Below are positions 58,101 through 60,986 of a DNA stretch of 64,000 nucleotides, piece after piece. The stretch comes from Fonticula alba ATCC 38817. Taxonomy: Eukaryota > Protista > Nucleariida. Position 1 is the stretch's first letter. The number at the start of each line of letters is the position of its first letter. The position numbers were made by a program, and so were the translations under genes. The stretch is taken from the NCBI GenBank assembly GCA_000388065.2, contig KB932208.1. One strand, given 5' to 3'. The notes beneath the pieces were generated by a model. The model was not told where the DNA came from. It did no database searches and saw only the letters and a list, made by a program, of their open reading frames with translations.

Positions 58101-58990
58101 GCCGTGATGCCGGAGATGAGGAAGCTGGCCGGCTCATTGCCATTGGGGTCGGTGACCACAAAGGAGTCGCCGAAGTCATTGAAGATGCTGGCAAAGGTGC
58201 CGCGCGACTCGGTGACCACGGTGCAGCCGGTGGGGGAGAGCTTGCGCTGGGCCTCATTCAGGGCCAGGGCCACCTTGTGCGACTGGTTCACCACCACCAC
58301 CACCTGGAAGCGCTTGTGCGACAGGAGGGCCTCGGCCATGGTCGGCTGGGCCAGGGCGTCGAAGGGGAGCTCCGGCGCCGAGTCGAAGACCGACACCTCC
58401 ACATACGGGTTGAGCTCCTTCAGCTGGGGAAGCGAGGCCTTGGCGCGGGGCTCGCCGATCTCGGACAGGTAGAACTGCGTGCCGAGGTCGGCCAGGGCGG
58501 TGGGCGTGTTGTCGAAGAGAGTGAGGGACTTGACACCGGCGAGGACGATGTTCTTGGCTGAGGGGAGGGAGAAGAAGTGCAGGTCAGTTTGCNNNNNNNN
58601 NNTGAGGGGAGGGAGAAGAAGTGCAGGTCAGTTTGCTGGGGCGGGGGGGGGGGGGGGGGAGCAGGAAGGAGGTGGCCATTGTCATGTACCGATCTCAATG
58701 CCAAGGCCGTCCACACCGACCAGCAGCACATCCGAGGAGGACATGCGCTTCATGGCCTCATGGCCGAAGACGTAGCTGCGAGGGCCAGGGTCGTGTGAGT
58801 GAGTGGGGGGGGGGGGGGACAAAAGCATCAGGAGGAGGTGGGGCACAGGGGGGAGGGGGGAACATACAGCTGGCGGGAGTAGAGACCCTCATCGATCTTG
58901 GAGGAGTCGGTCATGGTGGGGATGGGCGCGGCAGGTGAGTCGAGCCGGGGGCGCTTTTGCTCGGAATCCGGAACAGTAAACGCGGCTGGG
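55198..58990 (-). CDS. UBA1: Ubiquitin-activating enzyme E1; exons 58868-58990 (internal ATG 58914), 58690-58775, 55589-58557, 55198-55302; probable extra 5' exon 59916-59989
   Basis: [60 protein letters not shown], catalytic ICTLKNFPNAIEHTIQW, FEKDDDSNFHIDFV, IIPAIATTTA, C-terminal UFD. Confidence 0.98.
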
Positions 58991-60986
58991 CTGCGCGTGC
59001 GACGGAGGGGGGAAGGGGAGACATTAGCCAGCGGTGGAGGGAGGCACGCGGTCCGAAGGGGAGGGAGGGGGGGGGGGNNNNNNNNNNNNNNNNNNNNNNN
59101 NNNNNNNNNNNNNNNNNNNNNNNNNNNNNNNNNNNNNNNNNNNNNNNNNNNNNNNNNNNNNNNNNNNNNNNNNNNNNNNNNNNNNNNNNNNNNNNNNNNN
59201 NNNNNNNNNNNNNNNNNNNNNNNNNNNNNNNNNNNNNNNNNNNNNNNNNNNNNNNNNNNNNNNNNNNNNNNNNNNNNNNNNNNNNNNNNNNNNNNNNNNN
59301 NNNNNNNNNNNNNNNNNNNNNNNNNNNNNNNNNNNNNNNNNNNNNNNNNNNNNNNNNNNNNNNNNNNNNNNNNNNNNNNNNNNNNNNNNNNNNNNNNNNN
59401 NNNNNNNNNNNNNNNNNNNNNNNNNNNNNNNNNNNNNNNNNNNNNNNNNNNNNNNNNNNNNNNNNNNNNNNNNNNNNNNNNNNNNNNNNNNNNNNNNNNN
59501 NNNNNNNNNNNNNNNNNNNNNNNNNNNNNNNNNNNNNNNNNNNNNNNNNNNNNNNNNNNNNNNNNNNNNNNNNNNNNNNNNNNNNNNNNNNNNNNNNNNN
59601 NNNNNNNNNNNNNNNNNNNNNNNNNNNNNNNNNNNNNNNNNNNNNNNNNNNNNNNNNNNNNNNNNNNNNNNNNNNNNNNNNNNNNNNNNNNNNNNNNNNN
59701 NNNNNNNNNNNNNNNNNNNNNNNNNNNNNNNNNNNNNNNNNNNNNNNNNNNNNNNNNNNNNNNNNNNNNNNNNNNNNNNNNNNNNNNNNNNNNNNNNNNN
59801 NNNNNNNNNNNNNNNNNNNNNNNNNNNNNNNNNNNNNNNNNNNNNNNNNNNNNNNNNNNNNNNNNNNNNNNNNNNNNNNNNNNNNNGGGGACCCGCCTAT
59901 TTCTGGCAGGCATACCCTGCGATTGTCCTTGTCTGGCGCGGCCCGTGCGGTGGCCGCCGGGCGGCGGGACCCACATCGTCCGGGGGCATCGGGCCAGGGC
60001 GGGCTCAGGTAAGCGGCACACAGCGCGGCCGGCGCGGTGGCGCGCGACTGGGCTGGGAATGAAAAAAAAATAAAATTGCGCATCGAGAAGACTCCGCCAC
60101 TAGACCGCCATCCCCCCCCCCCCTGGTCATCTCCCCCGAGGCGCTCCCGGCCGGGATACATCCCAGCCTGTGGGTAACCACCGCCCTTGGGTGTGGCGTC
60201 GAACGCCGCCGGCGCCGACTCCAGTCGACCACTGCCCGCGGAAGGGTCGGCCGGACATCCGGACACCTCTGCCGGTGTGAACCCGGGCGGAAGTTCGCCG
60301 CCGCAAGGTGAAATGTGTGCCCGTGTGGAATCACGATATGTGCACGTGTCACCGCGTGAGACGACCCCTGGCCCGCACAGTTATCCCCGGCCCGGCTCCA
60401 AAATGGGAAGTGATCTGCGAACAAGTGTAGACGGGCCGTGGAACCGAACAACCATATCGTTCTATCTCTCCCGGGATTGAGGGCGCACCCCCCGTCCGTG
60501 CGCGCGGATGCGTGTCCTTGCCGAAAATGCCCCCCCCCCCCCCCCCGCCCGGTCCGTCTCTTCATGCTGGCTCCCCCTCTTTCTATCTCTCTCCCAAAGT
60601 CGACGTGCGACACGGCCCTCACCCTTCTCGCCGATCACAGAGGCCCGGTCGCAGAACTTGTGAGACCTCCCGCCCCCCCACCCCACCCCGCCCGAAGGGG
60701 GCTCGAGGCCAGAAGGATGCATCGTCCCCGGGGGTGCAGTTCTCGCGAGCGCCGACTTTTCCAGATCATGTCCAGATCGCCGCCCGAATCGGGCAGTCCA
60801 GCGGCCGGACTTTCGCGCCTTCGGAGGCGTGTCCCGCCCTGCCCGCCGCCGCCCCCCGTCGGTCAAGTAGCCAGCATGGCAGGGGCATTGGGTAGAGAAG
60901 AGCTGCCGCGGGGGTTGCCACCTTCGGGCTCTCCATCTCCGATTGTACCCCCGTACTTGGAACCTTCCCCGGCGGGGGGCGGCGAA

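What the first reader, a model, noticed from the sequence alone, without database searches (positions are those of the whole stretch)
58868..59989. UBA1 appears to have a two-start architecture (NLS-bearing long form plus short form), like human UBA1a/UBA1b
Seen: the exon containing [16 protein letters not shown] (ATG 58914, context CCCACCATG) is open upstream to an acceptor at 58991 and encodes PAAFTVPDSEQKRPRLDSPAAPIPT, including a basic KRPR motif. Across the gap, an ATG at 59989 gives MPPDDVGPAARRPPHGPRQTRTIAG ending at a GTATGC donor (59915) in phase 2, the phase the acceptor needs. Joined, the internal Met is residue 51. Established: human UBA1 uses M1 (KKRR NLS, nuclear) and M41 (cytoplasmic; mutated in VEXAS), with M41 shortly before [10 protein letters not shown]. 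Inference: this protist has the same nuclear/cytoplasmic E1 switch, either ancestral or convergent.
Basis: partly seen in the sequence, partly recalled or inferred. Interest (0 to 1): 0.7.

Follow-up and report, generated by a model that had tools for sequence, protein, structure and literature searches.

The report
Fonticula UBA1: unproven upstream NLS start
The ubiquitin-activating enzyme gene of the amoeba Fonticula alba clearly starts mainly at its annotated ATG; an NLS-like KRPR motif sits in frame just upstream, but whether it is ever translated cannot be settled across the assembly gap, and the proposed upstream start exon is no better than chance.

Summary
The window is Fonticula alba, and the gene is UBA1 (H696_04756, 1068 aa) on the minus strand. 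The public model starts at ATG 58914, and I rebuilt it exactly.

**Against the two-start reading**
- Codon bias switches on sharply at ATG 58914. A-ending codons are 4 of 1068 in the CDS, 3 of 25 in the "extension" and 4 of 24 in the ATG-59989 "exon". The last two match non-coding levels.
- Four ATG-to-donor pairs in the required phase occur in the 714 nt upstream. Random sequence gives at least one in 38% of trials.
- About 110 fungi, a choanoflagellate, an aphelid, a red alga, two oomycetes and Nannochloropsis have short N-termini without an NLS, like the annotated Fonticula protein.

**For it**
- KRPRLD lies in frame 9 residues before the Met and resembles animal UBA1 NLS blocks (p about 0.006 to 0.03).
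- A plausible branch site, AG-free tract and CAG acceptor lie at 58991.

**Not obtainable**
- The gap could not be closed.
- No Fonticula transcript fragments are in the protein database.

**Verdict**
- ATG 58914 is the principal start; this is firm.
- The upstream frame is probably an untranslated leader or intron (about 0.55).
- A minor NLS-bearing long form remains possible (about 0.35).
- The exact ATG-59989 exon is at most 0.1.

The parts
58868..58914 (-). UBA1 exon 1 of the public model: annotated start ATG 58914, [15 protein letters not shown](L), donor GTATGT at 58867
   Evidence: Joining the four exons reproduces P0001 (H696_04756, 1068 aa) exactly.
58915..58990 (-). In-frame open leader: 25 codons plus 1 base, with the NLS-like KRPRLD at 58956-58939. 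Either 5' UTR or a rarely translated N-terminal extension.
   Evidence: Sequence read. Codon tests: 3 of 25 codons end in A, against 4 of 1068 in the CDS. Motif statistics.
58991..59077 (-). C-rich, AG-free tract with CTAAT (59027-59023) and a CAG acceptor (58993-58991). It looks like the 3' end of an intron, or is promoter/leader sequence. It contains an out-of-frame uATG at 59024.
   Evidence: The first AG after the gap edge is at 58992. The uORF from 59024 ends in the TGA that overlaps the main ATG. The style matches UBA1 introns 1 and 2.
59078..59886 (.). Assembly gap of 809 N (estimated length). The same G/C homopolymer lies on both sides.
   Evidence: Ten of the 14 gaps in the window abut G/C homopolymers. 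Both 10-N gaps are overlapping contig ends.
59916..59989 (-). A second, out-of-frame ATG lies at 59976.
   Evidence: Sequence read. It is one of four phase-2 ATG-to-donor pairs in the flank, and random sequence gives at least one in 38% of trials. Third positions fit the flank composition 3.9 bits better than average-gene coding. No Pfam match.
58690..58775 (-). UBA1 exon 2 (donor GTACAT)
55589..58557 (-). UBA1 exon 3, the 989-codon main exon (donor GTGCGT)
   Evidence: The Pfam domains of P0001 are ThiF, E1_FCCH, E1_4HB, UBA_E1_SCCH and E1_UFD.
55198..55302 (-). UBA1 exon 4, ending ...FIKVNIRK plus the stop codon

Best explanation
This is the ordinary single-copy UBA1 (ubiquitin E1) gene of Fonticula alba, and ATG 58914 is its principal start, possibly its only one. 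That start gives a short, fungal-type N-terminus, with the Met 10 residues before LYSRQ.

The 76 bases upstream of the ATG are most likely untranslated leader. They may be preceded by a 5'-UTR intron ending at the CAG at 58991. The C-rich tract, the gap and the ATG-59989 segment then belong to that intron or to the 2.6-3.5 kb divergent promoter region shared with a WW-HECT E3 gene.

On this reading the open frame is the usual consequence of 65% G+C, and the KRPR motif is a coincidence at the 1-in-30 to 1-in-200 level.

Shown: the gene model, the short-N-terminus pattern in relatives, and the codon-bias boundary at the ATG. Inferred: that the leader is not translated.
For: - The four exons reproduce the public protein exactly, starting at ATG 58914.
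- Codon bias begins at this ATG. A-ending codons are 4 of 1068 in the CDS and 0 of 44 in exons 1-2, but 3 of 25 in the extension.
- No 25-codon window of UBA1 scores as low as the extension.
- The extension's third positions fit local intron composition 12.5 bits better than the UBA1-body bias, and 1.7 bits better than average-gene bias.
- About 110 fungal UBA1 proteins start 10-26 residues before LYSRQ and have no basic cluster. The same holds for Salpingoeca urceolata, an aphelid, a red alga, two oomycetes and Nannochloropsis.
- An open 25-codon frame is expected in 67% of local-composition sequence.
- The ATG-59989 exon is at chance level (38%) and non-coding-like.
- If that exon were in the mRNA, it would add an out-of-frame uATG (59976) whose uORF runs into the main ATG. 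That is unlikely for a gene with such strong expression-type codon bias.
Against: - KRPRLD lies in frame 9 residues before the Met. It matches the classical K[KR]x[KR] monopartite NLS pattern and the animal UBA1 N-terminal block (examples: AKKRKLDS plus 6 residues then M; AKRPRLQ). The chance estimates are p = 0.006 by position matrix and 0.2-3% by regex.
- A plausible branch site, AG-free tract and CAG acceptor stand exactly where a coding intron would have to end.
- Scored against codon usage of average genes in the window, the extension falls at the 20th percentile of coding windows. A rarely translated extension is therefore not excluded.
- The public model could not have been extended across the gap in any case.
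Confidence: 0.55

Rival explanations
1. A minor long isoform exists. A fraction of ribosomes or transcripts start at an in-frame AUG upstream, either hidden in the gap or in an upstream exon spliced to 58990. This adds an extension with the KRPRLD nuclear localisation signal. ATG 58914 still makes the bulk, NLS-less form. This would be a UBA1a/UBA1b-like nuclear/cytoplasmic pair, most likely arisen independently of the animal one.
For: - The in-frame K[KR]x[KR] motif has animal-like context and spacing to the Met.
- The frame is open, and an intron-like 3' end lies at 58991 with the first AG after CTAAT.
- The Met has A at -3.
- The extension's codon content is compatible with an average or weakly expressed gene: pooled-table score +3.3 bits, at the 20th percentile of coding windows.
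- The human precedent is documented (PMC4013028): two isoforms arise from Met1 and Met41, and the first 11 residues are needed for exclusive nuclear localisation.
Against: - No upstream AUG can be shown.
- Third-position composition equals the non-coding level.
- All sampled non-animal relatives with names lack such an extension, so the prior is low and the origin would have to be convergent.
- Similarity of the flanks to the animal block, given the core, is not significant (p = 0.08).
Confidence: 0.35
2. Exon ATG 59989-59916 is spliced (GTATGC donor) to 58990, giving a 50-residue extension with the annotated Met at residue 51.
For: - Phases match: 2 bases plus 1.
- The donor GTATGC has +4 T, like the proven UBA1 intron-1 donor GTATGT.
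- The 809-N gap may be only a break inside one poly-C run, since the same homopolymer lies on both sides. In that case the intron would be about 115 nt plus the run, similar to the other UBA1 introns of 92 to 286 nt.
- An AT-rich patch with an initiator-like TCATTCC lies about 70 nt upstream.
Against: - It is one of four equally phased ATG-to-donor pairs in the flank, and random sequence gives at least one in 38% of trials.
- 4 of its 24 codons end in A.
- Its third positions fit flank composition 3.9 bits better than average-gene coding and 15.7 bits better than UBA1 bias.
- Its codon score sits at the non-coding median.
- The ATG has C at -3. An out-of-frame ATG with a better context follows 13 nt later, and its ORF ends in the TGA overlapping the main ATG.
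- The donor departs at +4 from the genome's GTRCGY consensus. That consensus is a lead from earlier notes; five donors near here were read, and three of them fit it fully.
Confidence: 0.08
3. The annotated start is simply wrong and every UBA1 molecule carries the extension (a single long form).
For: The gap prevented annotators from extending the model. The frame is open up to the gap.
Against: - The extension's third positions are 12.5 bits (about 6000-fold) less likely under the gene's own bias than under intron composition.
- No 25-codon window in the 1068-codon CDS has 3 or more A-ending codons.
- The N-terminus is already complete relative to more than 110 homologues.
Confidence: 0.02

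Closest known systems
Human/mammalian UBA1a (Met1, nuclear) and UBA1b (Met41, cytoplasmic)
   Same: - A Met lies shortly before [10 protein letters not shown].
- A K[KR]x[KR] basic cluster lies upstream in the same frame.
- The human facts come from PMC4013028.
- Invertebrate animal homologues in the searches show the same layout...AKKRKL[DE]... then M-A-x-N-G... then IDEGLYSRQ.
   Different: - In Fonticula no upstream in-frame AUG is demonstrated.
- The extension lacks the gene's codon bias.
- The motif is 9 residues from the Met, against about 30 in human.
- The residues flanking the motif do not significantly match the animal block (p = 0.08).
- There is no expression or localisation evidence.
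Fungal Uba1 (e.g. Mucoromycota, chytrids, Dikarya), the nearest named relatives at 48-52% identity
   Same: - Same domain set: ThiF, FCCH, 4HB, SCCH, UFD.
- Same short N-terminus, with the Met 10-26 residues before LYSRQ and no N-terminal basic cluster.
- The annotated Fonticula protein fits this pattern exactly.
   Different: Whether fungal genes also have an in-frame NLS-like motif in their 5' leaders is not known. Their genomic 5' regions could not be fetched with these tools.
Plant UBA1 N-terminal extension with a KKRR-type cluster (recalled from memory, not tested here)
   Same: It would be a second non-animal lineage with a basic cluster ahead of the conserved IDE..SRQ motif.
   Different: This rests on memory only.

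Membership tests
Canonical ubiquitin-activating enzyme UBA1/Uba1 (E1) | Domain architecture: two ThiF/adenylation repeats with FCCH, 4HB, SCCH and C-terminal UFD | tested here: met
   Precomputed Pfam domains for P0001 are PF00899, PF16190, PF16191, PF10585 and PF09358. The protein is 48-52% identical over its full length to named fungal and animal UBA1.
Canonical ubiquitin-activating enzyme UBA1/Uba1 (E1) | Catalytic cysteine motif (..ICTLKNFP..) and nucleotide-binding GxGxxG in the active adenylation domain | tested here: met
   Both AICTLKNFPN and GAGAIGCE are present in P0001. That these motifs are the catalytic ones is from general knowledge of E1 enzymes.
UBA1a/UBA1b-type dual-start (nuclear/cytoplasmic) architecture | An in-frame AUG upstream of the internal Met on the same mature mRNA | tested here: inconclusive
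   There is no AUG in the 54 visible in-frame codons up to the gap. The only candidates lie beyond an 809-N gap and occur at chance frequency. RNA reads were unavailable.
UBA1a/UBA1b-type dual-start (nuclear/cytoplasmic) architecture | A nuclear localisation signal confined to the long-form-specific extension | tested here: inconclusive
   KRPRLD fits K[KR]x[KR] and resembles animal blocks (p = 0.006 to 0.03). Function as an NLS cannot be tested here.
UBA1a/UBA1b-type dual-start (nuclear/cytoplasmic) architecture | An internal Met shortly before [10 protein letters not shown] that can serve as a start | tested here: met
   ATG 58914 has A at -3 and lies 6 residues before IDEGLYSRQ. The gene's codon bias begins there.
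UBA1a/UBA1b-type dual-start (nuclear/cytoplasmic) architecture | The extension is translated (shows a coding signature, or both protein forms are detected) | tested here: not met
   Third-position composition equals non-coding: 3 of 25 codons end in A, against 0.4% in the CDS. The extension is 12.5 bits worse under the UBA1 bias and 1.7 bits worse under average-gene bias than under intron composition. This rules out an abundant long form but not a rare one. Detecting the proteins is not possible with these tools.

The most novel reading that the evidence does not exclude
Fonticula alba, a holomycotan amoeba whose fungal relatives all lack the feature, makes a minor NLS-bearing long UBA1 from an upstream in-frame AUG (in the gap or an upstream exon), alongside the major short form from ATG 58914. 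This would be an independently evolved counterpart of the animal UBA1a/UBA1b nuclear/cytoplasmic switch.
Probability: 0.35. Interest if true: 0.55.

Novelty: already known. Interest (0 to 1): 0.3.

Why it matters
A real long form would make a nucleariid amoeba the first non-animal opisthokont known to partition its E1 enzyme between nucleus and cytoplasm by alternative initiation. That is the mechanism disrupted in human VEXAS syndrome. It would also suggest that this solution evolves repeatedly.

As it stands, the firm result is modest. The public gene model's start is the principal start. The proposed upstream exon has no support. The question now reduces to one cheap experiment: a cDNA or PCR product across the gap.

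Tried and rejected
2. Closing the gap. Each flank occurs once in the assembly, and the look-up of encoding contigs holds no record for the protein.
3. Transcript-derived protein fragments. Word searches with the main exon (544-1730 aa candidates) and with P0001:1-300 (165-525 aa) returned nothing from Fonticula except the NCBI protein.
4. A closer relative (nucleariid). None appeared; the best non-self identity was 52%.
5. P0121, which carries AKRPRLQ, looked like a possible protist lead. Its 781-aa cluster mate is 67% identical to Lingula, so it is an animal, and its contig is not on record.
6. A June 2026 preprint that seemed to offer a new Fonticula assembly concerns Acrasis kona.
7. Rfam and tRNA scans of 53000-64000 found nothing.
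8. Pfam finds nothing in the extension or the upstream exon.
9. A single constitutive long form was rejected on codon bias.
10. The joined (spliced) reading was never sent to a search tool; it was used only inside scripts, for frame arithmetic.

Full report
**What is there**

The window is contig 8 (337385-401384) of a 31.3 Mb, 214-contig assembly. The 989-codon exon on the minus strand matches only one protein at 100%: Fonticula alba H696_04756, an E1 ubiquitin-activating enzyme of 1068 aa (P0001).

Joining four exons reproduces that protein exactly:
- exon 1, 58914-58868, donor GTATGT
- exon 2, 58775-58690, donor GTACAT
- exon 3, 58557-55589, donor GTGCGT
- exon 4, 55302-55198

So the public model starts at ATG 58914 with [15 protein letters not shown]. 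The domain set and the catalytic motifs are those of canonical UBA1.

**Check of the observation**

- A CAG acceptor lies at 58993-58991.
- 25 in-frame codons follow, ending in ...SEQKRPRLDSPAAPIPT, before the Met.
- ATG 59989 is followed by 24 codons plus GG, then GTATGC.
- The joined reading has the annotated Met at residue 51.

The 809-N gap (59078-59886) lies between the two pieces. Nothing can be said from the assembly about their continuity, because each flank occurs only once in the genome.

Most gaps in this window abut G/C homopolymers. This one has the same run on both sides, and both 10-N gaps are overlapping contig ends. The true gap may therefore be much shorter than 809 nt. That is an inference only.

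**How much of this exceeds chance**

- Open frame. A 25-codon open frame appears in 67% of sequences simulated from the local composition.
- Upstream exon. In the 714 nt beyond the gap there are four ATG-to-GTRNGY pairs in the required phase. Random sequence of the same composition gives at least one in 38% of trials, and 98% with a looser donor. The upstream exon therefore carries no evidential weight.
- Basic motif. This is the exception. K[KR]x[KR] is expected in 0.2% (simulation) to 3% (six-frame count over the window) of 25-codon stretches.
- Match to animal UBA1. A position matrix built from 16 non-redundant animal UBA1 NLS blocks scores the Fonticula segment at p = 0.006. The flanks alone, given the core, reach only p = 0.08.

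**Coding signature**

UBA1 has an extreme codon bias. Only 4 of 1068 codons end in A, and none of the 44 codons in exons 1-2 do. The extension has 3 of 25 (CCA, CAA, TCA) and the upstream exon 4 of 24, which is the non-coding level of 11-17%.

No 25-codon window of UBA1 scores as low as the extension.

Third-position likelihoods for the extension:
- 12.5 bits worse under the UBA1 bias than under local intron composition
- 1.7 bits worse under the average bias of 16 other coding stretches in the window

Third-position likelihoods for the upstream exon:
- 15.7 bits worse under the UBA1 bias than under its flank composition
- 3.9 bits worse under the average-gene bias than under its flank composition

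With a full codon table from average genes, the extension falls at the 20th percentile of coding windows and the 89th of open non-coding windows. The upstream exon sits at the non-coding median.

Two conclusions follow.
- Translation at the rate of the UBA1 body starts at ATG 58914. A constitutive long form is excluded.
- A rarely translated extension is neither supported nor excluded.

**Relatives**

About 110 fungal UBA1 proteins begin 10-26 residues before LYSRQ and have no basic cluster.

The same holds for these named sequences:
- the choanoflagellate Salpingoeca urceolata
- an aphelid
- a red alga
- two oomycetes
- Nannochloropsis

Extensions of the form ...AKKRKL[DE]... followed by a second Met (M-A-x-N-G) shortly before IDEGLYSRQ occur in animal-type sequences. 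The sequence with AKRPRLQ is also an animal, since its cluster mate is 67% identical to Lingula.

In this sample, then, the short N-terminus is the common state, and the annotated Fonticula protein fits it. A Fonticula long form would more likely be convergent than ancestral. Some annotated models may themselves miss upstream exons, so this is a prior, not a proof.

**Leader anatomy**

From the gap edge to 58992 there is no AG. CTAAT lies at 59027-59023, about 31 nt before the first AG, and the tract is poly-C rich like UBA1 introns 1 and 2. An intron ending at 58991 is plausible, but it could equally be a 5'-UTR intron.

An out-of-frame ATG at 59024 would give a 37-codon uORF ending in the TGA that overlaps the main ATG. 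That segment is therefore probably either spliced out or upstream of the transcription start.

That is an awkward leader for a highly expressed gene.

Earlier notes of this scan report a GTRCGY donor consensus for this genome. I read five donors near here.
- Three fit the consensus fully (GTGCGT, GTACGT, GTGCGA). Two of these are inferred, from continuity of the WW domain in the neighbouring gene.
- GTACAT has +4 C but +5 A.
- UBA1 intron 1 is GTATGT. The candidate GTATGC shares its +4 T, which is atypical but not disqualifying.

**What could not be done**

No stretch was reported to me as human-like.
- No Fonticula transcript fragments exist in the protein collection.
- The look-up of encoding contigs holds no record.
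- The spliced model was searched exon by exon or through the stored protein. The joined extension was never sent to a search tool.

**Weighing**

I took a prior of about 10-15% for an N-terminal NLS extension in a non-animal lineage. The adjustments were:
- a motif likelihood ratio of roughly 15-70 in favour
- a codon ratio of about 0.3-1
- a penalty because the only visible AUG exons are non-coding-like if the gap is short

This leaves the long-form hypothesis near even odds, slightly below. My commitments:
- ATG 58914 is the principal start (firm).
- The leader is untranslated: 0.55.
- A minor NLS-bearing long form exists: 0.35.
- The exact ATG-59989 exon is used: 0.08, a subset of the long-form case.
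- A constitutive long form: 0.02.

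Noticed in passing
window 58593-58602 and 28388-28397: Both 10-N gaps are flanked by an exact duplicate (34 nt and 40 nt). They are unmerged overlapping contig ends, not missing sequence. The first lies inside UBA1 intron 2 and inflates it from about 98 to 132 nt.
   Followed up: partly
window, all 14 gaps (e.g. 4196-4312, 9286-9710, 51209-51409, 59078-59886): Ten of the 14 gaps abut G or C homopolymers, and four have the same run on both sides. 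The assembly seems to break inside long homopolymers, so estimated gap lengths may be far too large.
   Followed up: partly
window 62453-64000 (+), possibly from 61530: A WW-HECT (NEDD4/Rsp5-type) E3 ubiquitin ligase gene runs divergently from UBA1 (Pfam WW 6.5e-07, HECT 6.2e-11). The E1 and an E3 thus share one 2.6-3.5 kb intergenic region. Whether they are co-regulated is unknown.
   Followed up: partly
window 55198-58914 (-): UBA1 has an extreme codon bias: A at the third position in 4 of 1068 codons, three of them CAA. Other coding stretches of the window average about 5% and non-coding sequence 11-17%. This makes third-position A a sharp local test for coding sequence in this genome.
   Followed up: yes
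This is a termination-reinitiation-like layout, if either ATG is ever in the mRNA.
   Followed up: partly
proteins P0078, P0106, P0125, P0142, P0199, P0242, P0244 and others: The layout of an NLS plus a second Met (M-A-x-N-G about 10-15 residues before IDEGLYSRQ) is widespread in invertebrate-type UBA1 sequences. It is absent from the choanoflagellate Salpingoeca urceolata. The UBA1a/b layout may therefore date to early animals. Most of these sequences carry no taxon name.
   Followed up: partly
window 55175-58561 (+): A 1128-codon ORF antisense to UBA1 has non-coding third-position composition (A3 of 14%). It is a by-product of the GC-rich coding strand, not a gene.
   Followed up: yes
window 60055-60085 (-): This is the only AT-rich patch in the region (gcaattttatttttttttcattcc), with an initiator-like TCATTCC about 70 nt upstream of ATG 59989. 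It could be a core-promoter element for UBA1 or for the divergent gene.
   Followed up: no
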